A stretch of 64,000 nucleotides of DNA from positions 95,790,001 to 95,854,000 of the forward strand of contig JBITNC010000001.1 of the NCBI GenBank assembly GCA_050084985.1, in the 5' to 3' direction. The notes below the pieces were generated by a model. That model saw nothing but the letters and a program-made list of their open reading frames with translations, was not told the origin of the DNA and searched no databases. This document shows positions 2,605 through 55,821 of this stretch, piece by piece; the stretch's first letter is position 1; every line of letters begins with the position of its first letter. The position numbers and the translations under genes were made by a program. The stretch is from Nageia nagi (Eukaryota; Plantae; Pinophyta).

Positions 2605-3963
2605 AATCTACCATGTAATGTAAAAAGCTTTCTATGTTATGATGATGATCTATGTCAAAACCCTGAGATAAAACTAATATAATAATATTAGTAATAAAAA
2701 CTAATACCAACATTATGCTCAATAACTCATATAGAATTGTAGCATCATTTTGACAGTACAATGCATAAAGTGACTAGAAGGGTTGTAAAAGGAGATGAAT
2801 AGGCTTACTTATAAATAGTAGAGGCAAACTAAGGTTGAATAAAGTTTCCTAAATTAATATGATTAAAAAATAAGTAATTATATTTATTTTTGGTGGACAC
2901 AAGGCAAACATACATTTGGCACCTCAAATAGTTAACTTTTTCTATTATAATATGAAGATAACAAATCAAAAATAAAGGCTACAAATAGTCCTAGGACAAA
3001 CTAACCAATTTTGGATTGGAGACCAATTAGGCAAGGTTAATCATTGGGCCAATTTAAGGTTCAACAAGATGATTAGGCCCAAACAAAAACATAAGGAATA
3101 AATATATAGATTTTTAGTATCTGCACTTGGCTATAACTCGATTGTACCTATTATGTGAAAAGAACCAAATGACCCTAATAACATTTACAAACACCTTCTA
3201 TCTCATTTTTATATATCATAAAAAATATATACCATGGTGTCAACATAAATTTGTGAATTTTGAGTATTTCTAAGAAGTTAGAGGTTCCATGTCTATTTAA
3301 ATTCTCTAAAGCATCTTTTTAGAAATATACTATTTATAATTCAAAATTTATCTAATGATAAAATACAAAACTTATTTGAATTAGGTTGATAATATGAATA
3401 ATTCCCAATAGGTATCCAAAATTTTTCATAAGAAGGATAGATATGGATTCATTTTTATAATATTAATCATTGAACTAGTAATTAATTATGTTTATTTTCT
3501 TCTTCTATGAGTATATTTTTGAAAATAACTTTATAACTTGTATTTATAATATTATTTTTACATGTTTCTAGATTGAGGCATATTTTTTATTATGCATGAT
3601 TTTGTTAGTATGATTATCTCTTATATTTAATTTTTTTATTCAATTATATAACATTTAAATATATTGAATGAAAATAAATGATTTAGGTTTATCATTTTAG
3701 GTATTTGAAATAAATTAGGATTCATCTTTCTTAATATGCATAATCAAATTTTGGGTTGATTATATGATTATAAAAGCATACAAAAATCTTAATTTCAATT
3801 TGTAATAGTTTAAAATCATATATAACACATACATTTAGTCATTTCCTAGGAATGCTTCTTTAATCCTCAAAATTAGATTATCAAGAATTACCTTAGCAAG
3901 ATACTTTAGTCTCTAGCATCTTACCACTAGTTTATGTCAAAGAATGATCTCATAATATTGATC

Positions 3964-4128
3964 ATTACTTATTCAAATGTTTCATATGTATTTATTGACT
4001 ACATATTATTTGTAATATTATATAATAAACATTAGATAACTACTATTAAATATTACTTATTCACATGTATTTCATGACTACATATTATTTGTAATATTAT
4101 ATAATATACATCAGATAACTACTATTAA
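3964..4128. repeat. Local ~80-90 bp tandem duplication
   Basis: attacttattca...gactacatattatttgtaatattatataat...agataactactattaa occurs twice; it is single in copy 4. Confidence 0.75.
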
Positions 4129-4591
4129 GATAAGGATAGTCCCTTTTACCTAATTTAGATAATTTCTATTAAGCATCTTAAATTTTCATCATTTCTACAA
4201 TATGAAAATATTTGTATGGAACATTTAAGGGATGTGATTATCTTAAGATCATTTCCCATTTTTCATATGAAATTATTGAAATATCTCAGGTAAAAAAAGA
4301 AATTCAAATATGAAAATAATTTTTATCAATAAAATCAACATTCTAATCATATTTATACTCGTTGAGTAAGTGAGAAACTTTATATTAATTGAAGATGTGT
4401 GAGGTTGTTTGTTGACCCCCTTAAACATTTATTTTCTATTTCAAATTCTCTTTAGAAATCTTTTTAAGTTTTTGGTAACGATAATATCACTACATGTGGA
4501 TAATTCATTAGAATAACCTCACTAATTAGAATAACCTCACTAATTATAACTCTGATAAAAAGTTAGTGAAAAAAAGGATCATTACATTTGG

Positions 4592-4742
4592 AAAGATATT
4601 GTAAGGGATATTATCAATATATGTCTCTATAGGATATTATCAAGATATTGTAAGAGGTAATATAAAGGACAAGTTCAAACATATTATCAATATATGTCTC
4701 TACAGGATATTATCAAGATATTGTAAGGGGTAAGATAAAGGA
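4592..4742. repeat. Local tandem duplications
   Basis: atattatcaatatatgtctcta(t/c)aggatattatcaagatattgtaag occurs twice and aagatattgtaag three times. Confidence 0.7.
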
Positions 4743-7700
4743 TAATTTAGTTAAAATAAAGGATCTTTACATTTGGTAAAATAACTTATGACATATGTCT
4801 CTATGACAGTTTTATAGGATGAAAATAAACTGACAAAAAAGGTTAGACATTATATTAGAACATCCTTAATAGGATGAAAAAGACTTGTAACATAACTCAA
4901 AAAAATATTTATCAATATATATATTTTTGGGCTTACCATGATATCCATGATGAAAACTTCTTGAATTTGTTAAGTCCCTATTTCAATCAGGTTTTGATAA
5001 GGAAAGATACATGATACAAAAGAAGAATAAAATAATTTTACCTTAGTTTAATTTCAAACTTACAAGATCATAATTCATTTGAATGCTTTGCCATATATGT
5101 AGGAATTATTGGAATGCTCATATTTGCAAAAAATATTATAATGATTCACTAATATTCAAAGTAAAAAATAGTTGCATGCTTAAATTTTGATATATGAATT
5201 CTATTTACCAAGGTTTACTTTACTATTTGTCAAGAAATGAAAGGAATATATACATAGATGACCATTTTAATTTAAAGGATAAGACAAAATACAATAGGAA
5301 ACATCCTAACATCAATGGTCTAATAAACCAAGAGGAATTGAATCAAGGTAGGGCATGATTTAGAAGTAAAGCATAAACTATGAGCCTTACTCAAAAGAGT
5401 ACAATCCAAACTAGACTACTTAAAACTATTATAAAACATGATTACAATGGATGACTAGAGTGTTTAAAGGCTTACCATATAGATAAAGCCATTCAAGGAT
5501 CAATTTGTTAACATAACAATAATCAAATAGTAATTCAACTAGAGAAAATTATAGGAATTGAATTGGTTTAAATAGATCTAAGCATTGTCACATCATATTA
5601 AAGTTAAGAATTATATTGAGAGAGGAAGTAGATGGGTGATAATTATCTTTCATGTATAAAGGAATCAAGAAGAATAAGAATGAATTAAATATAGTTTATG
5701 TAGTCGGTAAGTGGTAAGGTATGTGCCTACGAGAAATTGAATACAAGCTTATTTGATCATTACAAACCAAGTTCAATATATCTCAATTCAATTTTTTATT
5801 TGATATTATTTTTAATAATATGTTTGAACTATATTAAATTTAATGCCAAATTAAATATCATTTTAACTTTTAATGTCATAATTAATACTATTTTTTATAA
5901 GGTAAATTGAAAGAGATTTTTATAAAAGGACTCAAAACCTATATTTATAAAATAATATTAAAAAATATATCAAAATTGATCTACTATTATAATTATTTCT
6001 TAAAGATAAACAATCATCATTTGAGGTATTCCTTCATAAGTTCTTAAAGGATGTGTTCTCTAACCATAGCCTCAATTGTGAGTTTCTAAAAAACATTCAT
6101 GCCTTTAGGGCTATCAACTACAAGTTCTGTGAGGACAATGAGTTGGTATGCCTCCTCTTTAGCAACCTCATTTTGCTCTAGAACACGGGTCAACTATGTA
6201 ATCGATATTGACAACACTAGTTAGAGGATTTTTAATGCATGTATATTCCTTAATTTCATAGTTAATTGTTAGGGGCATCAATCATATCCATTTTGTAATG
6301 AAACCTCTTATTGATCATTTTTCCAACCTCCATCTTATAATCTTACTTATCAAATCCAAAGATAGATTGGATGGGATAATTAATGTTATATTCATAGCAT
6401 CAAATGCTTCTTTTAATTTTAATGTTATGTGTTACATTTCAATTCCTTTACATGTATAGAAACTTTAAATTCTAAATTTATTCTCTAATAATTAAATGAA
6501 AACCTATCTCAAAATATCCAAATTTTATTAGTAAAAACTTAATTACTTTCAAAAACTTAGTATATCTTGAACAATCAACAAATATCAGGAACCCAATCTC
6601 ATATGAGGGGGGAGGAAATATCTTAAGGATCATGATTCCAACTCTAAATAGAGAAACCAAGAAATATAAAAAAGGAATAATTGATGTTGGTTTCAAACCA
6701 AAACAAGCAAACCCACTAACTAGGAGATCACAGAAAGACACATAGTAATAGAAATAGCTAATGGAACTTAATCCATTCTAAATTTGGGTGAGATGAAAAT
6801 ACCCACCAGATACAAGAAATAAAATGTTATTTTAGAACATAAAAGAGGATTCAATGCCCCTTGACTATTGGAAGAGCAATTTAGAGCTCAAGAAGACTAT
6901 GGAGAGAAAGAGATCCTAGTATTATGTTAGAAGGATGTGATTACTTCCTAGTACTGCCCCTCTTAGGGAAAACCCTATGTTGGTCAATACGTTGTAGTAT
7001 ATAGAGTCCAAAAGAAAGATATGGATAGGTCATTTGTTTGGAAGTTTTTAAGTAAAGTACCTTAGCTATGAAATGAGTAACAACTTATTAATATTTCTTA
7101 CAACTATTATAACTTATATTTTACAAAATTTATGAATCAATTCAAAGTTGGAATGTAATATTTATCACCCTTCTTGTAAAAGGTTTGGGGTTCTTTCAAC
7201 ACCCCTTCTTTTACCCTTAATAAAAGAAATATTTTTAATGTTATGTGTAATATTTTAATATTCATTTTTGTTGTCTATACGTTTACTACCCATGATATCA
7301 TTTTTTGGTAGCCACATAAATAGAAAGAAAATATTATCGTAATAATAAAAATATCATTATAATATTATCATGGAAAATGTGTTGAAAGACTTATAGAATT
7401 GAGAGGTTTTCCTTTGAAGTGGCTATTGGACCCATTCCTTAAGGTTCATATTCAATGTAGCATTCTCTCTTGTCGATTGTTCCATTACATTTATTTAGAA
7501 ATATTACATATAATTACTATTATTGCAAGTAAAACATAGATATTTGAGATATCTATGTTTTACTATTATTGCAAGTAATTATAATATTATAATTCATTAT
7601 AAGTAAAACATACTCGTAAGGTGCACTCCAAATTTCAAACAAATTGGATATATGGAAAAAATTATAAATATTTTAAATTTTATGGTAAATTTGTTCCTTA

Positions 7701-8602
7701 AAGCATAAAATAATAAATTTATTTTTGCTCCATAGGTTGTAAATCAATTGATTGCTAGGAGATTTTTGTTGACTAAATAGAAAATCATACAATGTCATAT
7801 AATTTAATTTTCAACTCATTTTAATTGAAGAAGTGATTGCATCTGTACAATTTTTTTATAGAAAAAATAAAAATTCATTAGACAGTATCTTTTAGTGGAA
7901 GTATTTTAGTGCATAACAATTATTGGTTCAGTTTAAAAAGAATTTTGAAAGCTTGAAATAAAGGGATCATTCACCAAATACTAAGAGTAATATTTAAAGT
8001 TATGATTTTATGAGGTTGAGTAATCTTTTAGAGAAAATGTATCTTATGAAAAAAATTTAGAATTTTAACAACCTTTATCATTTAGAAAAAGTATCATAGT
8101 CTAGTAATTTGTGGTCATTTTGAAGAGAACTTTGAGAGCTTCAAATGAAAATTTATTTTATCAAATTTTGAGAATTATGAAATTACATAATTTTGAAGCT
8201 TGGGTAGTTATCCTAATACCTTAGCTTATAATGTGTTGGGTATAAACTATGGAGTATAAGTTACTACCTGAATATTTGCTCAAAAAGATTTTGATTTATT
8301 CGATTCCATAAAGATGCCTAATTTGAAAATTAAAAAGGCAAAAATATATGTAATTTCAAGTATTTAAGAAACAAAATTTAGTAAGTGTTCAATGTAAAAT
8401 AACAAGAATGAATAATGAATCAAGGTGAAAAAAGTTTGTAAATTATAATATTATAATAAACTGAATACTTATAATGAAGAAATTGCAATATAAGTATTTG
8501 CTCCAAAATTTAAAAGAAAAAAAGATGAATTAACTTTCATTATAAATCCTTTAATATTGATGGTTAAAAAGTGCGTAAAAAAAAGAGAAATTATTTTTTT
8601 TT

Positions 8603-9210
8603 GTAGATCTTACAACTAATTAAAACTTCATCAACACGGATTTGACATAATGTTTGCATCTTTTAAACATGGAAAAGTTAAAACTTTATGATGGTGAGAA
8701 ATTAAATCATTCTATGATTTCAAACTAGTGTGATAGGATCCCTGTAATCTTAGGAAGGAAGCGACAGCCTTGTCCTGTTTCTATTTACAAACATTATATT
8801 AAGAACAATGATTGTTCTCCATATTCCAAATAAACCGAATGGCTCCACAGATTTGTCAGAAAATAATGGATTAAGGTGATATGGCATATTGAGAATGAAT
8901 CTACTCTAGTTTCTTGTCTTCTCTATATTGTTAGCAGTCGTATGATAAACACATTTGAGGAGAGAAATGCAGACAGTGATGAGTGTCCATTAGAGGGAAT
9001 CCAGATACGATACGTCCCGATCAAGGAAGCTGTCCACAGCGATCATATCCGGGAGATGAATGCGTAGGCGGAATAATTATGTCCGAACTTTGTATTGGGT
9101 AGTACTAATGATGGATTGGACGTTGGCAAGCAATGGTTTCAGAGACTGATGACGGGTGCAGCTGGCCAACCATAGTCAAAGGGAGAGTAACATTTTGGTG
9201 CTTCTTCAAA
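8603..9210. other. Conserved CpG-retaining core of the repeat unit, copy 1 (function unknown)
   Basis: 8902-9070 is identical to 55468-55636 (169 bp). Only 3 differences over 8603-8866 versus copy 3. Many CG dinucleotides, in contrast to the depleted flanks. Confidence 0.85.
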
Positions 9211-9921
9211 TAAAAAAGGATAAAGAAATCTTAAAACCTTGGTCTCCCTTTGCCTTTACAATTGTTTATCTAAAACTTGAATGAGTCCATAGGCAATTTT
9301 ATTGACATGGAAAAGTAAAAATATTGTGTTATCAACGTTTCAAGGAATATGTGTGTTCAAGTGGATCTTTTTAAGGATCTTAAATAGTTATTGTACTTGT
9401 AAATTAAGGATACTTGCATTCACTATAAGGTTGTGGGTACCTTTTGAATACATGTTATTAATGTCAATTTGTGATCTATAAGATTAAGGATCATACTCTC
9501 ATGGAGGATCATTTCAAGTCTATCTCCATTGATTTCATCTTTGACCTTTGTTGTTCCTACATAAGTAAATAATAGAGGCTAGGATGAATGCACAATCATT
9601 TATAACAACAAAAATAGACATGTAAAGTTTGCTACCCTATATATCTCCCTAAGGAAAACTTTGACTCTTTCAAGTCCCTTCCTTTTCCTACACTCTTAAC
9701 TTCTCCCGCACTTTCAATCCCTTCTTTGGCTCAATCCCTTTTACCTTATACTTCCCTCTTCTTATATCCCTACCCTACCATCTTTGCTACTTCTTCATCC
9801 ATCATGGTTTTCTCGTCAAGTTTATCAACCACACATTAATCACCAAATGGACCTTTAAGTTCTCAATCCTCAATGATTGTCCAACACTTGTGCAACCTAG
9901 CTTGAACTAGAGAGAGTTATT

Positions 9922-10404
9922 TGAAGGAATTAACACTAACATATAACTTCCTAAATTACCAAGATTTCTTGAAAGCTCACAATTCACATTTAAAAAACTC
10001 ACAAAGATAACACAAGATATAAGTGGTTTCTCCAACTAGGAGTACATCCACTAACTAGATCTCACTTCATTCACAAACATGAATCTCTTACAATCCTCCT
10101 AAACTTTTCTCCTAAACACTATCCTATAGCATAACTTTACTCCACAAATTGGTGTGTGATCCAAAGAGGGAGCCTTCTATTTATAGGCCAAAATCCCTTT
10201 AGATCACCCTTTTACCTAATGTACAAAAGCATAACATGCACATCTTTTTACCCAAGAGGCATGCTCATGACATGGAGTGTAGGACAAGTTACATTATCAT
10301 ATTCACTTAAATACTTAAGGTATCAAATGATATTCTTAAGTATTAGTGAAATTACATAGAAGATTATTATAAAACCTTTAGAATAATGCATTATACATTC
10401 CACA
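9922..10404 (-). mobile_element. Solo LTR (483 bp)
   Basis: TG...CA ends; TSD TTATT (9917-9921) / TTATC (10405-10409). Empty site agttctcctctaaag in copies 2 and 3. Same family and orientation as the PBS-bearing LTR at 2118-2604. Confidence 0.9.
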
Positions 10405-10545
10405 TTATCCTCTAGAGAATCATCATCAAGCATATTTCCTTCACGAAAAAATATGAGTGATTTATTTTAAACATATTTCAATCTTTCACAGATTTGGAGG
10501 ATTAAAACATCATATATGGATATATATGATCCTCAATGATCTCCC

Positions 10546-11270
10546 ATGATCTTTCTCTCATGGAATGTCAAAGATATGATGGACAAAATGTGAGCCTAAA
10601 AACATTATCCAACATAACTCGTTATTATGGAAATCTCAATTTCTACTACCTTTAGGAAGTTAAAGCTATAGATTTTATTTTGCAAAATAAATGTAACTTT
10701 ATTTGGACATATAATCACTTTTATGTTACTAATCATTCTCAAGAGGAGGAGCTATTCTTTGTCATGGGACCTCAATGGCATGCCCATTTTGTTGTTAGGG
10801 GAGTGGATCCATCCAATTATGCCATATGGATTCTTATAGAATTAGCAAGCAACCATTTGATATAGTTAATGTTTATATCTATAATAATGCTTTTAATAGA
10901 TACAATATATGGCAATGACTTATTTTTCTCTATATCCCATGCAAGGTGAGTCCTATATGGTGACCTCAATATGATTGAGAGGGTATTTGATAAAGTCACC
11001 CATCTTCTAATGAATTAGATTGTAGGGTAGTGGGAAACTTGGTAATTAATGAAGAATAAACTAGATTTATCATATCCTAATTATTTCTTTTGACATTGTG
11101 ATCTCCCTAATCATTTATGGTTTACATGTCCTAACCTTCTAAATGTTTTCTTTGGAGTTATGAAACATATTGGTTAGGCTTTTTTGTCTAATCAATATTC
11201 TTTTCAATTTTCTTACCTTTCCAACTTGACATCCTTTGTGGAAGCCATCTTAGATACTATCAACTCTCAT
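10546..11270 (+). mobile_element. Ancient L1-type LINE remnant (endonuclease region), part of the repeat unit
   Basis: MIFLSWNVKD at 10546, L*EVK (=LQEVK) and VLYGDLNMIE are APE-endonuclease motifs; heavily decayed. Confidence 0.6.
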
Positions 11271-12546
11271 GTTTGAAACAAAGGCTCTTGATTCATTTCC
11301 TTTAAAACTAGAATGGGGGGATAGATATGTGGATGACACAAATATGAATTGGCCACATGGAAAAGATTCTCTTGAATTTCTTCATAACACCTTAATTCAA
11401 TTGATGATTGTATTCAATTTACAAAAGAAATTGAACATGATAGTAAGATACCTTTCTTAGATGTAGTAGTGTATAAAAAGGATAATGGGGATTTGGGTCA
11501 TGAGGTATATACAAAAAAGACACATACAGACATGTGCTTGCATGCTTCATCTCATCATCATTATGCTCAAAAGATGGGGGTATTCAATCCTCTAATAACT
11601 AGACTCCTAGAATTTCAATAATGACCATATACATAAGGAGAAAATGCATATAACTAAAGCATAATGAGTAATGGTTATTCTAACCAAAAAGATTAGACAT
11701 GCATGGAATAAGATAGAAAGAAGAAAAAATAATGAGAGAATAGACCATAATAATACTAATTCATACATAGGGGTAGTCTACCTTCCCTATATCGAGGGTT
11801 TAAGTGATAATTTAGCCAAAATATTAATGAAAGCACATATTAAGACAATTTTCTTCCTCTTAATAAATTAGAGAACATGTTCTTATCTGTGAAGGACTAC
11901 TTAGAACCCTTACAACATAAAGGTGTATATAAGATAATGTGTGACTGTGGAACTTGTTACATTGGTGAAATAGGTAAGTCAATACATGAAAGAGTTAAAG
12001 AACATTGTGCTGATTTACAATATAATAGAATAATCAAATCTGCCCTTGCTAAACATATAGATAAGACTAAACACCATATACTCATGGATAATATTGAAGT
12101 CCTAGCTAGATGTGATTAATTACAAGAACAAAGAATTAAAGAAGTTATTGAAATTAATCTTAACCCTAATAATATTAATAGAGACCAAGGTGTTGAGATT
12201 AGTAGGGCATGGTTACCTATTATTGATATAATTTACAAATAAAAAGGAAAAATAATTGATACTAAAATAGCCATAACTTTTGCATTTTAACTCGATTTTT
12301 CATTTTTTTACATCATTGGAAAGATATTTTATGTAGAATTTAACTTTATTTATCTTTTTGGTATGTTATAATGATAGAAAGTTGATATTGATTTTATAAA
12401 ATTGGGTAGTACTTATCTCTACTTAAAGAAGAAGGTTACACTTTATTTTCTTCATTCATTAATTCTAAAGATGGGTCCTATAGATTGGACTCGAAATATC
12501 AATAATTCAAATTCATATGCAAGTCAACTAAAAATAACTAAAGAGA
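11271..12546 (+). mobile_element. 5'-truncated Penelope-like retroelement (RT C-terminus + GIY-YIG endonuclease), decayed
   Basis: RYVDDT, FLDV..YTKKTHTD..LHASSHH, LPYIEGLSD, then GVYKIMCDCGTCYIGEIGKSIHERVKEH (GIY-YIG). Absent from copies 2 and 3. Confidence 0.9.
12458..12507 (+). ncRNA. Decayed minimal hammerhead ribozyme motif at the Penelope-like element 3' end
   Basis: CTAAAGA-T-GGGTCC-tatagatt-GGACTC-GAAA-TATC corresponds to CTGANGA/stem II/GAAA-CG-TC, with changes only at CHG and CG sites. Confidence 0.65.
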
Positions 12547-13364
12547 AATCTTAGTCTTCCTTTTCATTTTAATTTATGTTGTTATTTTATATTAACACTT
12601 CATTTCACCATCATCCCATAATAGTTATTCACATTTGTATATTTTATAACCTTTTGTATTTTTGATAAAATTATAATGATATTTGGTGTGCTTCTCCAAA
12701 TCTCTTTTTAGGGTGATAAGGTGGTGATAGAGCTTGATCATTTATGGATATTTATTAGCCACTAGGATATGCCCCTTTCACAATGAATCATATCCCACTA
12801 AAGTAGTCTTCTAGGTATAAATCTCAATCTTTCCAACATTGTCATCCAACTCTACATGGATACTCTAGATCCTCAATATGCCCTCATTCATAACCACAAC
12901 ATACTACATTATCTTGTATAACTCATCATACTAATGACTAGGATACATACTTTAAAGAATAGAACCCATCATTAGAAGGGATGACTTCCAAGGATATAAT
13001 ATGCATGGGATCAGATAATATTTTCCTATCATAATGATGGTGTCATATTCCTATTGAAACTAAGGATAAATGATGATGATAAGATCACCCCTTCCAACAT
13101 GATTTAAATGTCATTTTCTAAGATGCTCCTATAGGTTTAAACATGTGTTTATTATTATTTTTTGTTAATTCATCATCCAATATTAGGGTTAGTTTGAATA
13201 ACTCATATGGGGTTCCTTATCCACCCATTCTTTTTGTTGTAAAGTTATTATATATATTTTTAATATAATACATTTTCATGAAAAGAAGATTGATAAAAAC
13301 AAGTAATATCTATAAATACTTCATTAAATTGGATTGATTCTCAAGCTTGAAAATAATTTTCAAT

Positions 13365-16300
13365 TGTGATGGTGGGTGTTGTGGAGCGGGTGGGGAGTGA
13401 TGTGGTTCGAGTGGGCATGTCGAGGAGCTTGGTGGTTTAGGTGAGGTTTTAGATCAAGGTGGGGGAGTTGGTCTAGGATCAAAGATTCAAGTTGGTGAAG
13501 CTTTGAATGGTAATCCATTCCCTATTTCAGTTTCTAAGGTGAAGGTTGACCCTAAGCCTCTAGATTCTATCAAGAATATGATAAAGCAGAGAAAATTATC
13601 TTATACATAAGTGGCAAGAAGGTCAAACATCTCTCCTCTAGATTTGTGCTTTAATATTTGAGCTATGGAGGGGAAGATTAAGATTCTCCCAGAGATCATT
13701 AAGATCACTATGGAGGAAGGTGCTTTGAGTCTTGTGGGAAAGTTCTTAGGTCCACATCTGGATATAGATTCATTATGGGAATGGGCTTTTCAAAAATATA
13801 AAACAAGTAGGAGGTTTGATATTATGGCTCTTTTGAATTTTCTTCTTGATTAAGTTTTGTTTGGGAGAGGATCTTCAAAACATTTTGTATGAGGTACCCT
13901 AGATGTTTTAGTAGTGGGAACTATTTGTGATGAAATGGGCCTCAAATTTTGATCCCAATATCCAAGTCATTACTTTTGTTTCTATTTAGGTCAGACTTCC
14001 AAGTCTCTCATTTCAATATTGGCATGATGAAGTCTTATATGGGATTGGGAACTGGATTGAAATTCTTATTACCATTGATAAAGCTACCAAGATAAAATCT
14101 TGCATGATCTTTGCAAGATTATGCATAAGCATCTTCCTTACTTCGAACCTCCCAAAGATAATTGACTTAATTTTAGAGCTAGGATTTTGGTCACAAATGA
14201 TTGAGTACAAAAATCCTCCTCAAACCTATGAACATTGTAAGAACAAAGGCCATGATTCCTCATGGTGTCCTATGAAATTGTAGGATAAATATAAGAAAAA
14301 ATAATATGGTGGGAAAAGCTTTGTCCATATAATAGAGCTAGGAGATACTTTGGGACCGCCCGATTGTCAAGGAGGAATTGGGGAGTTTCCACCATTAATG
14401 CTTTCTATAGCTTGGAGGACCAGCTATCTAAGGTGGATCTGATGATGGAGAAACTATTATATCACAAAGCCATGGCCCTTGTGGGGCCAAGACAAATCAC
14501 AAATGAAGCCTTGCTAACATTGTTGGAAGATAAAGAGTTGGTTGATAGGATTTTAAACCAAGATATGGAGGATTAAGAGGATTCTTCCTTTTAAGAGGAG
14601 ATTCTAGTGCTAGAGGAGGAGTACCAAGGAAAGTGGGAAATTATTTCTCAAACACAAGGGTTTGAAGACCCCCAAGTTGGTGTTATGTCTAATGTTTTGG
14701 ATAGAGTCCCTAAAACTCAACTATTAGTACCCTTGGAACCTAGCTTGGAGCTCATAGCTCAAGTTGATATGAATGAAGATGTTCCTACAACCACCTATGT
14801 CTAGTCTATAGGGGGTAAGTTTTGGGATGATAAGGAGGATTATGAATCTTAAGAGGAAAATATTATTGCTACTTTGGGCTAGAATAATAAAAAGAAAAAG
14901 AAGAAACTTCATGGTTTGGTTAGAAAGGACCACCCTGGAAGACCCTCTAAGGGAGCATTAAGATACCAAGAAACCAAGATGAATATTACTAAGGGAGCCC
15001 AAGATACCCTATTTAGGGGCAAAGGAAATAAAGGTAAAATTGTGAAGTTATGAGAATCCTCTCTTGGAATGTAAGGGGAATATATGATCCCAAAAGACAT
15101 AGAAGTTCACTAGATTTAAAGAAGGATTTGATACCAAAGGTGATCCTTCTTTAAGAAACAAAAATTATTGAAAGAAAGGAACTTCTTATTAAAAATATTT
15201 TATGGAGGGAGGTGGATTTTGTTTCTGTTCATGCATTTAGTAAGTTTGGAGGTATTTTATGTCTGTGGGATATAACTAAATTAGAAGATAGAGTTATTAT
15301 TTCTATTTCAAGTTTTTACTCTATGATTTTCATTTCTTTAGTTACTAAGTAGACCTTTATTATTACGAATGTGTACAACCCCATTACTTGCATGGGTAGG
15401 AAAATTTTGTGGTCTTCTCTAAATCATATGTGGAAAGCTTTTATGGGTTTGAGCTAGATTGTGGCCGAAGATTTCAATGCATCCTTGTACCCTTTTGAGA
15501 AGCCATGGATCTAACTAGAATGAGAGAGGAGGGGGTCTCTTTCTTCCTTGATCTCTCAGGCTAAGATTTAATATCCCAATAGAGATCAGTTGATAAGCTT
15601 CTTAATAAAATTCTTGGCTTGATGAATGAAAGACTCAATAACCTTTTAAGTGGCAAGTTTTAAGAGAAGGAGTTTAAAGCTATTGTATTCGATATGGGTA
15701 GATCCAAGGCTCCTAGCCCAGATGGATTTTCTGAAAGTTGTTTTTAAACCTTTTGGGAAATCCTATGTAAGGATATTGTAATGGAAGTATAGGAATTTCA
15801 AGTCACCAAAATTATGCCAAAAGATGTGAATTCTACCTTTATTGCTCTTATCCCTAAAGATACTGATGCTAATTCTTTTGGTAAATTTTTCCCTATCAGC
15901 CTATGTAATTTCCTTTATAATATTATTTTGAAAATGATGGAAAATAGGTTGAAACCACTCTCCCTCTAATCATTAGTCCTATCAAAGGGGTTTTGTTCTA
16001 GGGAGGCAAATCTTGGATGGGATCATTATGGTTCATGAGGTTACTCACTCGACCTTGAAATCTGGAAGGGATGGCATGTTACTTAAGTTGGATATTAGTA
16101 AAGCCTAAAATAGAGTTAATTGGAAATTCCTATTATTGGTGATGCATAAGTTTGGGTTTTATTATGATTGGTTAGCTTTGGTTCATGAATGTATCTCAAC
16201 CACAACCTTTTATGTACTTTTCAATTGGGCTGATGTGGGCTATTTCCCTAGAAAAAGAGGTCTTCTCTAGGGTGATCCTTTATCCCCCTTCCTCTTTATC

Positions 16301-19300
16301 ATTTTAGCTGAAGCCTTAGGGAGGAGTATTCAAGTGGCTAGTCAAGAGGGTATGATATTTGAAGGTATTAAACCTACAAGGGATCTCCCACCTATATCTT
16401 ACCAATAGTTTTTAGATGATACCTTTATCTACTAGATCTTCTATTCCCCAAGCTCGTTGTGTAAAGCAAATTTGAGACCTTTATGAAGGGGTTGCAAGTC
16501 AAAAAATAAATTTTGAGAAAAGTAAGTTATTTTTATTAAACATTGGAAGGATTGTTGAATAGAGAGTGGAAAATAATTTTTTATTTTGCTATTGGAGAAT
16601 TGCCAACCACCTATCTGGGCATGCCTCTTTTTAAAGGTGCAATGAAAGAGGCTTTGTGGGATCCAATTATTGAATGCTTTTTGAAGAAGTTAGAAGGATG
16701 GAAGGGTGCACTTGTTAGTCAAGCAGGTAAACTTTAGCTGATTAAGTCAATTTTACAAAGCTTTATGGGGTATTATATGTCAATCTTTAAGATCCCAAGG
16801 AAGGTGTTAGACATGCTTATCCAAATTTAGAGGGACTTCCTTTATATAGGTATTAAGGAGAAAAAAAGGATGGCTTTGGTGTCCTGGAGGAAGCTTTTAT
16901 TACCTTTAATATAGGTGGTTTGGGTATTATAAATATTAAAAAGATGAATCTTGCTATGATGGACAAGATAGCATGGAAGGTGGCCATTGGGATAGATTGT
17001 CCTTAGGTGGAAATTGTCAAAGTTATGTATCTTCCAAATTCTTTATTTTTAGAAGAGGTAAATCCAAGGTTAGGCTCCACCTTTTGGAATGGTATCTAGT
17101 GTACTAAGGATTTCCTCAAAAATCATAAATGCTAGATTATTGGTGATGGGAGTAAGGTTCACTTTTGGAAGGATAGATGGTTATTGAAATCCCTTCTTTG
17201 GGAGCACGAGGATTTATATTTGTTGATGAGAAACCTTATTCTAAAATATGGAGGAAAGATTTACAATTACATTTCTCAAGGGGAGAGACACTCATGAAAA
17301 TTATTGACCTTAGACCATCCTTTATATTCTCAAAAGAAAGCCTTGGCTATAGTGAATAAGATGCTTAAATTCTATGCCATGTCTATAGGAAAGGAGGACT
17401 CCTTTCTTTGGGGGGGAGAAACAAGGGTCTTTCTCGGGCAAGTCAACCTACAAGTTCTTGGTAGTAAGATTACCTGAGCGGGATATGGCCCAAAAGGTGT
17501 GGGTCAAGCACCTCATTCCTAAAATTGGTTTTTTTTTTTCTAGGTGGCAACTCAAAATAAAATCCTCACTATAGATAACTTGAGAAGCAGGGGATTCAGT
17601 ATGGCTAATAGATGTATTTTGTGTTAAAGGAAAGAGGAATTAGTGAATCATTTGTTGATTCATTATTATTATATGGTTGAACTCTTACACTTTATTTTGC
17701 AACAATTTTATATGAAGTGGGTGGTTCCTAAGATAGTCAATGATATTCTATAATAATGGGATGATCCTTTCTTTAGTACTAGATTAAGAAGACTATGAGA
17801 TCTTAGTCTTCCCCATATTTGGTGGGGAGTTTGGGATGAAATAAACTATTAATATCACCAATTTCATTAAGAAGAACCTATCTATTTTCAAGCTCAAGAT
17901 ATTTTGGAGAGCCCCTGATGAGGCCTTGATTCTTTTTAATTGGGAATTGGAAAGGAATATTGATCTGATTGTTCAGCACCCTAGAAAGAAAGCTCATTAG
18001 GTGCATCCTTCAGTTGGTTGGCTCTTGGTTAACTTTGATGGTTTTTCAAAAGGCAATCTAGGTCCCGCGAGAGTGACAAGAGTAGTTAGAGATCAAGGGG
18101 GAGAATTAAATTAATTATTGCAAAACTTTTGGGTTATCAAATAGCCATTTTGTTGAATCTTGGGCAACATTCATTAGTCTATCTATGCTTGGAAGATTAA
18201 ATTGTAATAATCTCATTATCATGGGGGATTATCTCAATGTGATTAATATGCTCCAAGGTCCCACTCCTAAAGGTTAAGATGTCAACTCTATGATTGTGGA
18301 GGATAGAGGAATAATAATGGGATTGAAAATGTTACTATCCAGCATAAACTTTCGAGACTCTAACTTCTTGGTTGATCGAATTATGGATAAGGTAGTGGGA
18401 ATGGTAGAATTGATAGTTTGGGAAAGAGATTTTCTTGAATAGTTCATGGCTTTGGCAATAGAGGATGGATGGAAAGATTTGGCTAAGATGTAACATGGGT
18501 TGTGATCATTGGCTTTTAAATTTGAAAGTTATGGTGGAGTTTGTTTACTTAGGTGTTTTGTATGGAAGGTGGGTATTTTTGAAAAGTCTAGCTTGATGTT
18601 TTTATTGATGTGGACTAATGGCATGATTGGATGGGTTTTTTTTAGAATAATTGAATTAGCATCAGTAGATGTTGAGGTGGTTTATACTTATCTCATGGTT
18701 TTTTCCCTTTTGGGTGATAGGTTCTAGGAGTGTGGAAGATTTTGTTGGTAAGGCCAATTGGAAGGGTTTTGGTCTAGGTGACACTTGGGCAAGAGTCTAC
18801 CTTTTATTATCATGGGGGTAGCAAATTTGGGCTTGGTAAGCTTCACATCACTTGATTATGAGGCATAAAATGCATGGGAGTTAACTTTTCATATGATGTA
18901 GGATGGGACAGGCATGAACTTTAGCATATATAATGACTTCAAGCCCATTGTTAGCTCGACTTCATAAATAATGGATTTAGAGAAGTGATAGGTGATGATC
19001 ATCAAAGGGTTTGTAGGGAATCTTGCTATCCTTATAGTATGGACATCATAGCAAGGTAGTTGAGAAGGAGGTGTTTTCAATCTTAAAAGCTTGATTCTCC
19101 CAAAATATGAGTAAAGGTGATGGAAGCTATTATTTATAGTTAGTGTTCCAATAGATTTTCATCATATTTTCTCAGGAATCTATTCAAAAGAATTCATTAG
19201 AGGACCTTAGTGTTTCTGCTATAATGATGGCACATAAGAGAAAACAAGATGTGGAGGGATTAGAATTTAGATTAGAATTAAGGAAACTGAACGTCTCTTC

Positions 19301-20678
19301 TACTATTCAAACAATTGTAGAACTAGGGGGTATCTTGGATTTCTTGGAAAAATTTAATGATCATAATGAAGATGTTACTAGGAAGTTTTGGAAAGATTAC
19401 AAGGGGGCTCGACGAAGGTGTACAAGATCATATTTTAGGTGAATCACAAACTATTATCAAAGATCATGAGGTTGAAAATCTTAGGGGAGACAATTTGGTA
19501 GGATAACCATATTTTGAAAAATAGAGCTGGTTAAATTCTGTAGAGGGGGTCTTGAGCTCCCTCATGAGAAGTAGGTGGTAGTGGTCACATGTTGCTTCCA
19601 TAATTGTAGCTATAGGTTGCTCTTACAATTATGTAGTTCATCACCCTTGATAACACAAATGTATAAGTTTGTATTTTCCATTTTGGGTTCCTAAATCATC
19701 TAAAGGGAATCAAAATGAACATTCCTACATTCCTATTTATGGACTAGATAAGGCAATGAAGGATTTCCAAAAATGAAAAGGGAGTGACCTTAGCCACCAA
19801 GGTCTAATTTTGATGGTGTTTAAATATGTTATAGTTCATACGAGGGTCTTGAACATGTTCAATTGTGTGGTTTTGAAAGGGGGTCCTTTAGTTGGAATAA
19901 TTGAATGCAAATATGGAGGTGGTCAGAGAAGAAATTTGAATTAAATTTGAGAACATGGACTGGTAATTAGCTAGGATAAGGTGAAATGATATCAAACCTA
20001 AAAAGAAAAGAAAGGGGAAATTTACATGGAGGATTTAGATTTTGAGGATGACCTTGATGAGGTGGAGGTTGTGGAAAAATCACTTGAACAATTAGATGCA
20101 AAAAAATAAGGATAAGATATCCAACCTCTTAGGATGGAAGGTTGACTAGAAGGAGCTCTAGAAATGTTTACTATGGAAGAGAAGTGCACTTTTCTAGAAG
20201 TCCTTCCTGATATCCCAGCTCAAAAAGTTGATAATGTGGAAGGGATTGAGTTTGTTCCAAAGTCTCAGTGGAGGTCAAGGGTAGCTCGCTAAGGGAAAAA
20301 CCATTTTGGGTATGATCAATCCACTTTGGTTATAGTTAAGGCCCTTGAGAAAATTTTGCATGAAATGGAAGTGGAAGCTAGTAAGGAGGGTTGATGGTGG
20401 ATGAGTCCTCTATTTTGGTTATGTCCTTTGTTGGTTTCATGATTTTTACAAGGACACTAAGAAGGACTATTTTGATATTTTCTTTTTGCATATAGTAGTT
20501 TTAAATGTTGTATAGGAGGATTTTGATTTGATGTATTATCTTTGCTTCCTATAAGGATTATTATTTTTTGGATTTTCATGATCCAATCTCTCTCTTGAGC
20601 TTAAGTGCTTAATTTTGAGAAGTTGTACATGGTTAGGATTCTAGTAAAAATCCATCCTCCAATATTATTAAAAAAAAA
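13365..20678 (+). mobile_element. Near full-length decayed L1-clade LINE (ORF1, ORF2 EN-RT-zf-RNase H, extra 3' ORF, poly(A))
   Basis: ORF1: LVGKFLG and zinc knuckle remnant EHCKNKGHDSSWCP. ORF2 starts MRILSWNVRG at 15050; APSPDGF, GLL*GDPLSP, *FLDDT, TYLGMPL, NRCILC..E..NHLLIH, and RNase H NFDGFSKGNLGPA at 18031. A9 tail at 20670-20678. Absent from copy 2 (empty site ~47400-47420). Confidence 0.92.
19224..20394 (+). pseudogene. Decayed extra ORF (ORF3) inside the LINE, product unknown
   Basis: Starts MMAHKRKQ..GGILDFLEKFNDHNEDVTRKF; later FITLD, FLNHL, NIPTFLF and HQGLI (19795), then an acidic/Lys-rich tail. Lies upstream of the LINE poly(A). Confidence 0.6.
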
Positions 20679-23529
20679 TTAAGCAATGGTTGAATAAGTG
20701 TATGAATGAATTTTTAATAATGGTATAAGGACATGCCATTTATAACAAGATAACATGATACAATAATTAGGAGGGTTTATTAGGTTTATTTGAGAGAAAT
20801 ATTGGGAGTTTTATATCATAATATAATGCATAAAACGGGTCCATATTATATTATATGTAGGAATATAATGCATAGAGATAATTAATTGCCAACTTTCAAC
20901 ATATATCTCTATAGGGTTTACTACCTATGATATCATTATTTTATAGGCATATAAGGAAGATATAACTACAACATCATTATGGAAAATATATTGAAAGACT
21001 TACATACTTAGAAGGATTTTCCTTGAAGTTTCTATTAGATTTATTACTTTCTTAAGGAATATTATATGGTATTCTTTTTAATCTTAAAATTTGATATTTC
21101 ATAAGTTATTCTCTCTTATTGACTATTCTATTGTATTTTTTTAGTAAAGTCCCAAAACAAACCACTTGGTAAATTAAAACGATTTTTTATACAATAACTC
21201 AAAACCTATTATTACAAATTTGGAATAGTGTGGGAAAAAAAACTACCATTACTTATATCATATTACATTTCCTAAAAAAGGATAAATATTTTTACACATT
21301 TCATACTTACAGAGAATATTTCCCTTTTTAATGGGATTACTACTAAAACCATAATATTTGGGCCTACTATTCTTAAAATATTAAAAATTGATCTTCTAAA
21401 ATCATTAACATTAGTAGTCATCATTTCAACTTCCTATGAATTAAGAGGCTCATACCTTTAGCTTATTGTATTAGGATCCATTTTCATATATTTGGATAGA
21501 TTTCATATGATTTCTTATCTAATTTTGAGAGTATTCTACTGCTAAAGCCATATAAGATTTTCTGCTTATTGTCAGCAACATGTTTGGTTGTTTCTTTTTA
21601 CCTCACCTCATCTTCACTTATAAATCCAATATGTTTTCATGCCATATCAACTTTATTTTATACATTTCAAGTTACCTAGATATCATTCTTGAGAAATTTT
21701 ATTTATTTTACTATAGGTTCCTTCAAGTTTGATTAAAGCTTAGACTCTTTATCTTGATATGCTACTATTAATCCTTTGTTAAGAGATTTCCTTCTTAATT
21801 TTGTAGTGATCCAACCTCTATTATTAGGATGTCCAGTTTTTTGTATTTGCTTCACATTATCCACATATTGTTTAGTAATTCCATCCCTTCTCTCTGGTTC
21901 CTTTTTGATATCCTTGCCTATGATTACCACCATATTCTCCTTGTGCATACTTGATCTATATTCCCTTTATTTAATGGTTCCTTTCATAGAATCATTTGCA
22001 ATTTTTCCTTCCTCTAATTTTTGGTTTCTAATTCACCATTTGTTTCTTGATTCTCTATTACTTACAAATTATATTTTCTATGATTTTCCTTGTTGGGCAA
22101 GATCCTACATTGTGACCAATATGTTTGCAAGTTAGACACATATAATTTTTATTTTCATAGAGCATTTAGTAGATCTATTCTCCTAATTATGATTCTAATG
22201 TGATTATCTTGAAGAGATTTACTCCAAATTCCATCATGACATAAAACCTTGTATTCACCATTTGAGTTCAATCTTTTATGATCTCATTTGATGATAGAAA
22301 TATTTTTAAGGATCCTATGATCCCCTCAAACATATTTTATTTCTAAAATTTGAATTGATGATGCAAAAGGATAACCCAAATTTGATCCATCATAATTTGA
22401 GCTTTGAATGGGTTGAATTTTGGGTTCCATTTTTCTAGAAACAAACCTTGCTTACTAAAAAGCTAAGGTGAGCTTAAAATAAAGTCCATATCCTTTACAT
22501 TAATAATGGTGAACATGATGTAATCATCGAATATTGTAATGATATATATAATTCATTTAATATTTCACCTTAATGTTTCCCATTTATACATCATATCAAT
22601 ATCTGGACTAGCTCCATGAAGTTTTCCAATGAGATTGTAATGCTCCCTTTCTATTGATTGATGAGCCCTCCTTCACTAAGAGGAGTTAAATGAAGGTAAT
22701 ATTGCTTCAATAATGGTATGCATTCTTATTTCTTATGTTGCATCCATATTTTGATATATTTATCTTAAATATTCAATTCTTATGGTCTTCAATACCTAAT
22801 ATTTATTTGGAATTTATCTACACAATGCTTACAAGACATCATTATTGCATACTTGTGCTATCATATAAAAAATATAACATAAATATAAAAGAAAACATGC
22901 AATAATATATTTAATCTAAAAAAAAAAATGTATTAGTGGATCTAAATTATAAACTTATAACATGCATCAAACAATCCTATGGTAGAAATTTAATATGTAT
23001 GATCTAATCTACCATGCAATGCAAAAATATTTCTATTTTAGGATGATGATGTATGTCAAAACCCTAACATGAAGCTAATCTAATCATTGTAGTAATAAAA
23101 AGTAATACAAGCATTGTGCTCAATATCTCATAGAGAATTTTAGGGTCACTCTAAAAGTATGATAAATAAAGTGATTAGAAGGGTTGTAAGGGGAGAGGGA
23201 TAGACATACATATATATAGTAAAGGCAAATTAGCGTTTCATAAAGTTTCCTAAATTAAAAAGACGTAAAATAGGGAATAAAGTTTATTTTTATTGGAAAC
23301 AAGTAAAATATACAATTGGAATCTTAGATAGTTAGTTTTTTCCATTCTAAGATGATGACAATAAAGCAAAAAAAGGCTAAAACTAGCCCAAAGATGGATT
23401 GATTGATTTTGAATCTACAATCCAATTAGGCAAGATCAATAGATGGGCCAATTTATGAGTTAGTAGGATTATTAGGACTTGACATAAACATGATGAATAA
23501 ATATGCACATTTTCAATGTCTATACTTGG

Positions 23530-24810: not shown

Positions 24811-24821
24811 GTATTTCTTTT

Positions 24822-41200: not shown

Positions 41201-42729
41201 TGTTGGAAGTTTCTAAGTAAAGTTCTTTAGATATGAAAGGAGTAACAACTTGTTAGTCTTTCTTACAATTGTCTTAGCTATATATTTTTACAAATTTTAT
41301 GAATCAATTTGGAGTTCAAATGTAATACATATCACTCTTCTTGTAAAACGTTTAGGGACCTTTCAACATCCCTTCTTTAAAACTTAATAAGAAAAATATT
41401 TTAATGTTATGTGTAGTATTTTAATATTCATTTTTGGTGTTTATAAGTTTACTACCCATGATATCATTATTTGCTAGCCATATAAATAGAAATAAAATAT
41501 TATTGTACTAAAGAAAATATCATTATAATATTATCCTAGAAAATATATTGAAGGACTTGTAGAATTGAGAAGTTTTCCTTTGAAGTGGAATTGGAGCCAT
41601 TTCTTCTTTATAGAATTCCATATGGTGCTTCCCTATCTTAAGGTTCATATTCAATGTATTATTCTCTCTTGTTGATTGTTCTATTACAATTATTTATAAA
41701 TGTTACATATTATTATAATTATTGGTTGGTTTATGACAAGTGGTACTAGAGAATGGATCTTGGTTATTTGAAGATAAAAAAATAATATCATTTTCCCTTT
41801 GGAGGACCAAGTAAAATATAGATATCTCACTCATGATTAAGTTTTCTTTTTTTTCATGAAATTTAGAGGGTTAACAAAAAAAACATACTCATAAAGTTGC
41901 ACTCCAATTTTCAAACAAATTGGATATATTGAAAAAATTATAAATATTTTAAGTTTTATAGTAAATGTGTTCCCTAAAGCACAAAATAATAAGTTCATTT
42001 GTATATCAATGCATTCTTCATTAGACTATATCTTTTAGTGGAAGTATTGTAGTGCATAACAATTACTAGTTCAATTTGAAGAGAATTATGAGAGCTTGAA
42101 ATAAAGGGATCATTCATCAAATGCTAAGAGTAATTTTTAAAGCTATGATTTTATGAGGTTGAGTAATATTTTTTATGAAATTTATCTTATGAAAAAATTT
42201 AGAATTTTATCGGCCTATATCGTTTAGAAGAAGTGTCATAGTTTAGTAATTTATGGTTGTTTCGAAGAGAACTTCAAGAGCTTCAAATGAAGGTTTGTTT
42301 TATCAAATTTTGAGAATTATGAAGTTATATATTTTGAAGCTTAGATAGTTAGCTTATAACTTAATAGGGTATGAACTATAAAGTACAAGCTAGTACCTAA
42401 ATATTTGCTCAAAAATATTTTTATTTTTTCGATTCCATAAAGATACCTAATTTAAAAATTAAAAAGGCAAACATATGTATAGCTGCAAAATATTTAAGAA
42501 ACAAAATTTGGTAAGTGTTCAATGCAAAATAACAAAAATGAATAATGAATCAAGATGAAAGTTTATGAATCTACTCATTGAAAATTATTTATAAACTGAA
42601 TGCTTATAATGAAAAAAAGTATTTGCTCCAAAATTTAGAAGAAAAAAAAATGAATTAACTTTCATTATAAATCCTTTAATATTGATGGTTAAAAAGTGCA
42701 TAAAAAAAAAAAAGAAATTATTTTTTTTA

Positions 42730-51058: not shown

Positions 51059-51060
51059 TA

Positions 51061-51100
<40 letters not shown>

Positions 51101-51106
51101 ATATAT
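51059..51106. repeat. Imperfect (TA)n microsatellite
   Basis: Direct reading; expanded relative to the other copies. Confidence 0.85.
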
Positions 51107-55790: not shown

Positions 55791-55821
55791 TAGGTAAGGA
55801 GAAAGAAATCTTAAAACTAGG

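What the first reader, a model, noticed from the sequence alone, without database searches (positions are those of the whole stretch)
8603..9210. A near-invariant, CpG-retaining ~0.6 kb core is the only preserved cargo of a ~13 kb tandem-array unit
Seen: flanks of the copies differ at roughly 1 in 5 bases, mostly C>T/G>A, and have lost nearly all CG. This block (also 42730-43277 and 55172-55790) is ~98% identical between copies 1 and 3, includes a 169 bp exact match, and keeps over a dozen CGs. None of the nine copy-specific insertions interrupts it. It matches no TE domain or RNA gene I recognise. Known: methylated plant DNA decays by deamination, and unmethylated islands in large plant genomes mark promoters and enhancers. 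Inference: this is a long-term unmethylated and/or selected element, amplified together with its dead-TE packaging, e.g. a copy-number-tuned distal enhancer or ncRNA array (loosely analogous to the maize b1 upstream repeats).
Basis: partly seen in the sequence, partly recalled or inferred. Interest (0 to 1): 0.9.

Follow-up and report, generated by a model that had tools for sequence, protein, structure and literature searches.

The report
Gene-conversion patch over an unmethylated-looking island
The near-identical 0.5 kb block shared by three old 13 kb plant tandem repeats was made alike by two overlapping copy-and-paste (gene conversion) events, not preserved by selection. It sits beside a real ~0.35 kb island that has escaped methylation-type decay.

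Summary

1. **Near-invariance.** It has pair-specific edges.
   - Units 1 and 3 are 99.1% identical over 8603-9070, including a 169-bp exact match. They drop to 87% at 9071-9237, which is flank level.
   - Units 1 and 2 are 96.7% identical over 8468-8960 and drop to 79.5% beyond.
   - Units 1 and 3 are only 79% identical over 8468-8602.
   - This is the pattern of two overlapping gene-conversion tracts (permutation P<0.0005 each). The all-three "core" is their overlap. Transversions are depleted as much as transitions, and small indels lie inside, so neither hypomethylation nor constraint explains the identity.

2. **CpG/CHG retention.** It is confined to the right half (8872-9237, CpG o/e 0.76-0.87, against 0.08-0.22 in flanks).
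   - It persists where copies are at background divergence. CpGs are shared at 7/14 sites there, against 3/63 in flanks.
   - This fits long-term hypomethylation without sequence constraint.

There is no Rfam, RNA-structure, Pfam or protein match. No run on record as RNA holds the core, and it is not high-copy. Methylation, accessibility and cross-species conservation could not be tested. An enhancer or ncRNA array is not supported. A recombination-prone unmethylated island is the best reading.

The parts
2605..23005 (+). Tandem unit 1. It carries a 7.3 kb insertion at 13365-20684 and a 487-bp insertion of a very high-copy repeat at 9918-10405.
   Evidence: Self-BLAST; MAFFT alignment of the units; read depth
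23006..50230 (+). Tandem unit 2. It is split by a Ty3/gypsy LTR retrotransposon at 23530-36234, whose LTRs are 94-97% identical.
50231..62580 (+). Tandem unit 3. Unit 4 begins at 62581 and runs off the window.
8468..8960 (.). Older conversion tract between units 1 and 2. Identity is 96.7% (16 substitutions, 7 indel events). Unit 3 is 79% identical over 8468-8602.
   Evidence: Site patterns; permutation P<0.0005; identities
8603..9070 (.). Younger conversion tract between units 1 and 3. Identity is 99.1% (4 substitutions, 3 one-bp indels), with a 169-bp exact match at 8902-9070. Unit 1 is the inferred donor.
8872..9237 (.). CpG/CHG-retaining island in unit 1: GC 0.41, 11 CpG, o/e 0.76.
42603..43110 (.). 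Unit 2 counterpart of the unit 1-unit 2 tract. It carries a 27-bp insertion opposite 8872. The end coordinate is approximate.
42997..43298 (.). Unit 2 island: 7 CpG, o/e 0.61. It is truncated by a deletion of the stretch matching about 9124-9270.
55172..55636 (.). Unit 3 counterpart of the unit 1-unit 3 tract.
55440..55817 (.). Unit 3 island, the best preserved: GC 0.44, 15 CpG, o/e 0.87.
55819..56509 (-). Unit 3-specific 691-bp insertion abutting the right edge of the island. On the minus strand it ends in an A-run next to the junction, so it looks retroposed. CpG o/e is 0.36. It has no Pfam match.

Best explanation
The block is two things that overlap.

(a) Near-identity. Two non-allelic (inter-unit) gene-conversion events reset a few hundred bases between copies of an old tandem duplication.
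- The older event joined units 1 and 2 over about 8468-8960. It has 3.3% divergence since.
- The younger event copied unit 1 into unit 3 over about 8603-9070. It has 0.9% divergence since.
- Unit divergence elsewhere is 14-16%. The stretch where all three copies are alike, 8603-8960, is simply the overlap of the two tracts.

(b) CpG/CHG retention. A ~0.35 kb island (8872-9237 and its counterparts) has lost CpG and CHG far more slowly than the rest of the unit, while other bases diverged at the ordinary rate. This is what long-term absence of cytosine methylation without purifying selection would give.

Inferred link. An unmethylated, open patch inside otherwise methylated repeat DNA is where breaks form. 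It is also where copies stay alike long enough for homologous repair from a neighbouring unit. That would make it the conversion hotspot of the unit. Breaks repaired by end joining would leave the small indels and filler insertions seen in unit 2.

Status. The tracts, their edges and the slow CpG/CHG decay are shown. Hypomethylation, the break hotspot and the donor direction are inferred.
For: - Odd-one-out site patterns switch abruptly. Over 8468-8602 unit 3 is the odd one at 27 of 31 variable sites. Over 8960-9070 every variable site has unit 2 as the odd one.
- In a GENECONV-style permutation test, both runs give P<0.0005. No other genuine tract exists in the 13 kb unit.
- Identity steps are 79.1% to 99.1% to 87.0% for units 1 and 3, and 85% to 96.7% to 79.5% for units 1 and 2.
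- Unit 3-specific divergence over 8468-8602 is 20%. That is pairwise-level divergence, not the about 6% expected from one relaxed lineage.
- Transversions are 0.8% in the unit 1-unit 3 core and 6.4% in flanks, so loss of methylation-driven transitions cannot explain the identity.
- The indel-to-substitution ratio is 0.44-0.75 in the tracts and 0.13 in flanks (P=0.014 and 0.037).
- CpG retention is independent of conversion. In core stretches at background divergence, CpG is shared at 7/14 sites against 3/63 in well-aligned flank (P=1e-4). CHG is shared at 7/17 against 3/66 (P=4e-4).
- No flank CpG is kept in all three copies (0 of 58). In the core, 7 of 12 are kept.
- These islands are the only CpG-retaining 300-bp windows in the 64 kb outside the young LTR element.
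- The chance that two ~0.5 kb tracts both touch one given 0.37 kb island in 13 kb is about 0.004 (my arithmetic).
- Literature context:
  - Gene conversion between direct repeats is common in plants, with predicted converted regions in 25% of LTR pairs (PMC7251063).
  - Plant meiotic breaks concentrate in nucleosome-depleted regulatory regions, and loss of methylation activates them (PMC5880243).
  - Stable unmethylated regions far from genes are common in large plant genomes (10.1101/2020.05.21.109744).
Against: - No methylation, accessibility or break-mapping data could be consulted, so 'unmethylated' rests on decay statistics from only 14-17 sites.
- Without an outgroup or further array units, donors cannot be identified. 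Unseen units could be the donors.
- Two tracts overlapping each other by chance alone has P of about 0.07, so the hotspot claim leans on the post-hoc island coincidence.
- The left 270 bp of the tracts is AT-rich and not CpG-protected.
- Part of unit 2's divergence at 8960-9008 is transversion-rich. It may be a small rearrangement rather than point divergence.
Confidence: 0.62

Rival explanations
1. Functional element under purifying selection: a copy-number-tuned distal enhancer, promoter or ncRNA gene. It would be kept invariant in each unit, with unit 2 and unit 3 having each lost one end of it.
For: - It is the only block >=95% identical in all three pairs.
- It retains CpG and CHG.
- A 7+7-nt palindrome with a CAATGATTG centre lies at 8803-8817, in the part where all three copies are alike.
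- Distal unmethylated regions are often regulatory.
Against: - Outside the pair-specific tracts, divergence is at or below flank identity (79-87%).
- The odd copy there shows pairwise-level divergence of 20%, not single-lineage divergence of about 6%.
- Seven indel events lie in the 358 bp where all three copies are alike.
- There is no Rfam hit at E<=1.
- Folding is no better than shuffles (z +0.58 and +1.96).
- The 66-aa open frame has only spurious repeat-protein matches among 1.84 billion representatives.
- No RNA holder was found, and a possibly-RNA run from the same sample does not cover it.
- Another species of the same study shows nothing at >=82% identity. This is weak, because contigs prove no absence.
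Confidence: 0.1
2. Conversion from an unseen, less decayed donor: another array unit beyond the window, or an ectopic master copy. That donor would import both the identity and the CpG richness, so no local hypomethylation is needed.
For: - The array continues beyond the window.
- Short DNA contigs from two low-coverage runs carry core variants that match none of the three copies, for example G>T at 8993. So further copies or alleles exist.
Against: - CpG and CHG sharing is high exactly where copies are at background divergence and so were not recently converted.
- Unit 3 keeps the most CpGs in 9071-9237, where it is 87% identical to unit 1.
Confidence: 0.15
3. Coincidence. Two ordinary conversion tracts happen to overlap next to a GC-richer, younger fragment of the ancestral unit, such as a captured gene or TE piece. 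There would be no mechanistic link and no special chromatin.
For: - Tract overlap alone has P of about 0.07.
- The unit is a patchwork with variable GC.
- One other 100-bp window reaches 95% in all pairs, at 20968.
Against: - Differential CpG/CHG decay after the duplication does not depend on ancestral composition (P about 1e-4).
- No other significant tract exists in 13 kb.
Confidence: 0.1
4. Assembly or polishing artefact that homogenised paralogous sequence.
For: None directly. This is a generic risk in repeat arrays.
Against: - The flanks are only 85% alike, so reads would not cross-map.
- The tracts still carry private substitutions and indels.
- A 179-bp contig from a public DNA run spans 8456-8634 with no mismatch, covering both left edges. 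That run may be the source sample.
Confidence: 0.03

Closest known systems
Non-allelic (interlocus) gene conversion between tandem duplicates or direct repeats, for example between the LTRs of plant retrotransposons or within NLR clusters
   Same: Short tracts of about 0.5 kb with abrupt, pair-specific edges inside otherwise diverged paralogous DNA. Detection relies on runs of shared variants. The effect is local 'concerted evolution'.
   Different: The repeats here are 13 kb non-genic units that are already about 15% diverged. Both detectable tracts fall on the single CpG-retaining island of the unit.
Distal unmethylated regions (UMRs) of large plant genomes (Crisp et al. 2020)
   Same: A sub-kilobase patch inside TE-rich DNA that behaves as if cytosines were not methylated over evolutionary time. 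CpG and CHG are kept while flanks are depleted.
   Different: The methylation state is inferred from decay only. The non-CpG sequence is not conserved between copies. No gene, accessibility or TF-binding data are available.
Maize b1 upstream hepta-repeat (paramutation and enhancer repeats)
   Same: A repeated non-coding element in tandem, far from any recognisable gene.
   Different: From my own knowledge, the b1 repeats are directly abutting 853-bp units whose number controls the epigenetic state. Here the 'cores' lie 13 kb or more apart as passengers of a segmental tandem duplication, and their identity comes from conversion. No regulatory evidence exists.
Meiotic DSB and recombination hotspots at nucleosome-depleted, hypomethylated DNA (Choi et al. 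2018)
   Same: This offers a mechanism for why conversion and small repair scars would cluster at an unmethylated patch.
   Different: It has not been measured here. Retrotransposon-rich DNA is normally a coldspot.

Membership tests
Interlocus gene-conversion tract | A run of variable sites at which one pair of copies agrees, longer than chance allows | tested here: met
   Scores were 15 and 23, against a permutation 99.9th percentile of 9 and 11. P<0.0005 for both.
Interlocus gene-conversion tract | Abrupt return to background divergence at the tract edges, with edges that differ between pairs | tested here: met
   99.1% falls to 87.0% at 9070/9071. 96.7% falls to 79.5% at 8960/8961. 79.1% rises to 99.1% at 8602/8603.
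Interlocus gene-conversion tract | All substitution classes are reset, not only methylation-type transitions | tested here: met
   Transversions are 0.8% in the tract and 6.4% in flanks.
Interlocus gene-conversion tract | Donor and recipient identified by an outgroup or population data | not testable with these tools
   Only two low-coverage DNA runs hold fragments. The unit 1 to unit 3 direction is inferred from unit 2's similarity in the overlap.
Unmethylated region / CpG island | CpG observed/expected well above the surrounding DNA | tested here: met
   o/e is 0.76-0.87 over 8872-9237 and its unit 3 counterpart, against 0.08-0.22 in flanks.
Unmethylated region / CpG island | Slower CpG and CHG loss since duplication, independent of conversion | tested here: met
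   CpG shared at 7/14 sites against 3/63. CHG shared at 7/17 against 3/66.
Unmethylated region / CpG island | Absence of 5mC in bisulfite or long-read methylation data | not testable with these tools
   No methylome is accessible.
Enhancer repeat array (b1-like) | Sequence constraint on the element across copies | tested here: not met
   Divergence is at background outside the tracts, and indels lie inside them.
Enhancer repeat array (b1-like) | Directly abutting short regulatory repeats | tested here: not met
   The cores are spaced by whole 12-14 kb units. No short tandem repeat lies at the core.
Enhancer repeat array (b1-like) | Enhancer activity, or contact with a target gene | not testable with these tools
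   No ATAC, ChIP, Hi-C or reporter data are available.
Non-coding RNA gene | Match to a known family, or a stable or conserved structure | tested here: not met
   Rfam gives nothing at E<=1 locally, and nothing in the whole window at gathering score. Fold z-scores are +0.58 and +1.96.
Non-coding RNA gene | Transcripts | tested here: inconclusive
   No RNA run holds it. One run guessed to be RNA gives no cover. Contigs cannot prove absence.
High-copy young transposable element | Depth far above that of the flanks in genomic reads | tested here: not met
   Core contig depth is 2.4-3.6, similar to flanks at 0.4-3. The repeat at 9902-10465 reaches about 1e5.
Protein-coding exon | An open frame with homologues or a domain | tested here: not met
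   The 66-aa frame has no Pfam match. Its only three hits are translated-satellite-like repeat proteins.

The most novel reading that the evidence does not exclude
Each 13 kb unit carries a genuinely unmethylated, accessible regulatory island: a distal cis-element or the promoter of an unannotated transcript. Its open chromatin would also make it the recombination hotspot of the array, so that array units exchange and homogenise just this element. That would be a regulatory module kept alike by conversion rather than by selection on each copy.
Probability: 0.12. Interest if true: 0.6.

Novelty: new member of a known kind. Interest (0 to 1): 0.3.

Why it matters
This is a clear worked example of how 'ultra-conserved' patches in repeat arrays can mislead. 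Identity between paralogues came from conversion, while the signal of chromatin state (CpG/CHG survival) is a separate, offset feature. If the inferred link holds, with an unmethylated patch acting as the break and conversion hotspot of otherwise silent repeat DNA, decay statistics alone could flag candidate unmethylated regions and recombination-prone spots in large plant genomes that lack methylomes. It does not currently support a new class of regulatory array.

Tried and rejected
- **RNA gene.** Rfam with a permissive E-value on 7800-10000, and at gathering threshold on the whole window, found nothing. tRNA scan found none. Folding of both strands was no better than shuffles.
- **Coding exon.** Pfam on ten open frames of the units, including the core's 66-aa frame, found nothing. 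A HMMER scan of 1.84 billion representatives with that frame gave three hits, all internally repetitive junk-like proteins.
- **The unit as a recognisable TE.** tblastx of the units against the LTR element and other insertions of the window gave almost nothing. I could not name the unit's origin, so 'dead-TE packaging' is unverified.
- **High-copy TE.** Rejected by contig depth.
- **Other copies or species.**
  - Two exact or degenerate pattern scans of metagenome contigs were blank.
  - The run search found only two small DNA runs holding 21-28% of the words, and no RNA holder.
  - Earlier-findings look-ups by sequence and by words were blank.
- **The unit 3 691-bp insertion as a gene fragment.** It has a near-open minus-strand frame but no Pfam match. 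An earlier weak CRAL_TRIO hit (E 0.028) was judged to be chance.
- **Similarity of the core to the rest of the window.** Only AT-rich noise was found.
- The laid stretch was 4201 letters.

Full report
**Setting**

- The window is AT-rich, TE-dense plant DNA.
- Self-BLAST and a three-way MAFFT alignment show a head-to-tail array:
  - u1 is 2605-23005.
  - u2 is 23006-50230. It is split by a Ty3/gypsy LTR retrotransposon at 23530-36234, which has gag, RT, RNase H and integrase domains and LTRs 94-97% identical.
  - u3 is 50231-62580.
  - A fourth unit starts at 62581.
- With large insertions removed, the units are 12.3-14.5 kb.
- In 100-bp windows the median pairwise identity is 81-86%.

**Check of the observation**

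- The block aligns at 8603 / 42730 / 55172.
- Across the whole unit it is the only extended stretch that is >=95% identical in all three pairs, over 8623-8950. One isolated 100-bp window near 20968 also reaches 95%.
- The 169-bp exact match is 8902-9070.
- CpG o/e is 0.66 in c1 and 0.77 in c3, against 0.08-0.22 in flanks.
- Several statements need correcting:
  - c1-c3 identity over 8603-9210 is 96.2%, not 98%.
  - Flank substitutions have ts/tv of only 1.2-1.3. When polarised by majority rule, C>T+G>A are 36% of changes. That is the largest class, with a per-base rate about 3.4 times the reverse transitions, but not 'mostly'.
  - c2's block contains two 27-29 bp insertions and lacks the stretch matching about 9124-9270.
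  - 'None of nine insertions interrupts it' has a chance probability of about 0.65.

**The invariance is a mosaic**

Listing, for every variable column, which copy is the odd one shows abrupt switches:

| Interval | Pattern |
|---|---|
| before 8468 | mixed |
| 8468-8602 | c3 is the odd one at 27 of 31 variable sites |
| 8603-8960 | very few differences |
| 8960-9070 | every variable site has c2 as the odd one |
| from 9071 | mixed again |

Identities step in the same places:

| Pair | Interval | Identity |
|---|---|---|
| c1-c3 | 8468-8602 | 79.1% |
| c1-c3 | 8603-9070 | 99.1% |
| c1-c3 | 9071-9237 | 87.0% |
| c1-c2 | 7856-8467 | 85.0% |
| c1-c2 | 8468-8960 | 96.7% |
| c1-c2 | 8961-9123 | 79.5% |

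- A GENECONV-style permutation of site patterns over the whole unit gives P<0.0005 for both runs. The only other high-scoring segments are places where one unit carries non-homologous sequence.
- The odd copy's divergence in the one-sided stretches is about 20%. That is pairwise level, not the roughly 6% expected if one lineage had merely been released from constraint.
- Transversions are depleted about 8-fold (0.8% against 6.4%), so absence of methylation-driven transitions cannot produce the identity.
- Indel events are relatively over-represented. The indel-to-substitution ratio is 0.44-0.75 in the tracts and 0.13 in flanks (P=0.014 and 0.037). Seven indel events lie in the 358 bp where all three copies are alike. 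This argues against purifying selection.
- The simplest history has two events:
  - An older exchange between units 1 and 2 over about 8468-8960.
  - A younger copy of unit 1 into unit 3 over about 8603-9070. Unit 1 must be the donor, because unit 3 then also resembles unit 2 in the overlap (c2-c3 identity is 97.7%).
- Relative to the 14-16% unit divergence, the events date to roughly a fifth and a sixteenth of the array's age.

**CpG/CHG retention is a separate, offset feature**

- It is confined to the right half:
  - 8872-9237 has 11 CpG and o/e 0.76.
  - The c3 counterpart 55440-55817 has 15 CpG and o/e 0.87.
  - The c2 counterpart has o/e 0.61.
  - The left half, 8603-8871, has 3 CpG and o/e 0.45.
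- Outside the young LTR element, these are the only CpG-retaining 300-bp windows in the 64 kb.
- In the aligned flanks, no CpG is kept in all three copies (0 of 58 sites with a CpG in any copy). In the core, 7 of 12 are kept.
- The effect persists where conversion cannot explain it. I took only stretches where the pair is at background divergence: c1-c3 over 9071-9237 and c1-c2 over 8961-9123.
  - CpGs are shared at 7 of 14 sites, against 3 of 63 in well-aligned flank (P=1e-4).
  - CHG sites are shared at 7 of 17, against 3 of 66 (P=4e-4).
- So cytosines in methylatable contexts decay slowly here while other positions diverge normally. That fits long-term hypomethylation without constraint. 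Methylation itself could not be examined.

**What it is not**

- Not an RNA gene. No Rfam family matches at E<=1 locally or at gathering score window-wide. There are no tRNAs. Folding is no better than shuffles on either strand.
- Not a coding exon. No Pfam domain was found in any open frame of the units. The core's 66-aa frame gave three hits among 1.84 billion representatives, all repetitive translated-satellite-like proteins.
- Not related to anything else in the window.
- Not a high-copy element.
  - The run search found two small DNA runs, from two organism labels, holding 21-28% of the core's words. No holder is on record as RNA.
  - Laying their contigs on 6800-11000 shows core pieces at depth 2.4-3.6, like the flanks. 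The c1-specific insertion at 9902-10465 reaches about 1e5.
  - A third species of the same study showed neither core nor flanks at >=82% identity. This is weak, because contigs prove no absence.
- Two metagenome pattern scans were blank.

**Mechanism proposed**

- Shown: two tracts, their edges, and differential CpG/CHG decay.
- Inferred: the island is unmethylated and open, and is therefore the place in the unit where breaks occur. It is also where neighbouring units keep enough identity for homologous repair.
  - Conversion homogenises it.
  - End joining leaves the scars seen in unit 2: two insertions of about 27 bp, one with an internal inverted repeat, plus a 146-bp and a 10-bp deletion.
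- The chance that two 0.5 kb tracts both touch a given 0.37 kb island in 13 kb is about 0.004 (post hoc). Overlap of the two tracts with each other alone has P of about 0.07.
- Published context:
  - Conversion between plant direct repeats is frequent (PMC7251063).
  - Arabidopsis meiotic breaks favour nucleosome-depleted regulatory DNA and are unleashed by loss of CG methylation (PMC5880243).
  - Tens of thousands of stable unmethylated regions lie far from genes in maize (10.1101/2020.05.21.109744).

**Comparison and verdict**

- It works like interlocus gene conversion in tandem duplicates, and it meets the tests I could run for that.
- It looks like a distal UMR by sequence decay only.
- It fails the tests for a b1-like enhancer repeat, an ncRNA gene, an exon and a young TE.
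Its 'unmethylated' inference is plausible. Its 'selected cargo / enhancer array' reading is not supported, and its own gene-conversion refutation criterion is met.
- This is a new instance of known processes. The co-location of the conversion tracts with the island is a modestly interesting point.

Noticed in passing
window 9918-10405: A unit 1-specific ~490-bp insertion belongs to an extremely abundant repeat. Summed contig depth is about 1e5 in two DNA runs and several hundred to about 1,200 in a run guessed to be RNA, with many variant contigs. No family was assigned.
   Followed up: partly
window 55819-56509: A unit 3-specific 691-bp insertion lies exactly at the right edge of the island. 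On the minus strand it ends in an A-run at the junction, so it looks retroposed. It carries a nearly open ~165-codon frame with 3 stops, has no Pfam match, and has CpG o/e 0.36.
   Followed up: partly
window 42996-43140 (unit 2): Two insertions of about 27 bp lie inside unit 2's core. The first contains an internal inverted repeat. The second seems partly templated from nearby sequence. They look like filler DNA from break repair.
   Followed up: no
window 20960-21070 / 47690-47800 / 60520-60625: A second ~100-bp stretch is 94-97% identical in all three units. It is AT-rich with no CpG. It may be a short conversion or chance.
   Followed up: partly
window 8803-8817: A palindrome with 7-nt arms around a central G contains CAATGATTG, an HD-Zip II-type site. 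It was already noted by another first-stage finding. It lies in the overlap of the two tracts, so its identity across copies carries no extra weight.
   Followed up: partly
window 23819-24115 and 35192-35488: Each LTR of the inserted Ty3/gypsy element holds 2.4 copies of a 124-125 bp tandem repeat.
   Followed up: no
window 11344-12649, 36936-38203: These stretches align to nothing homologous in the other units. One unit carries replaced or inserted sequence there. They inflate naive divergence and conversion scans.
   Followed up: no
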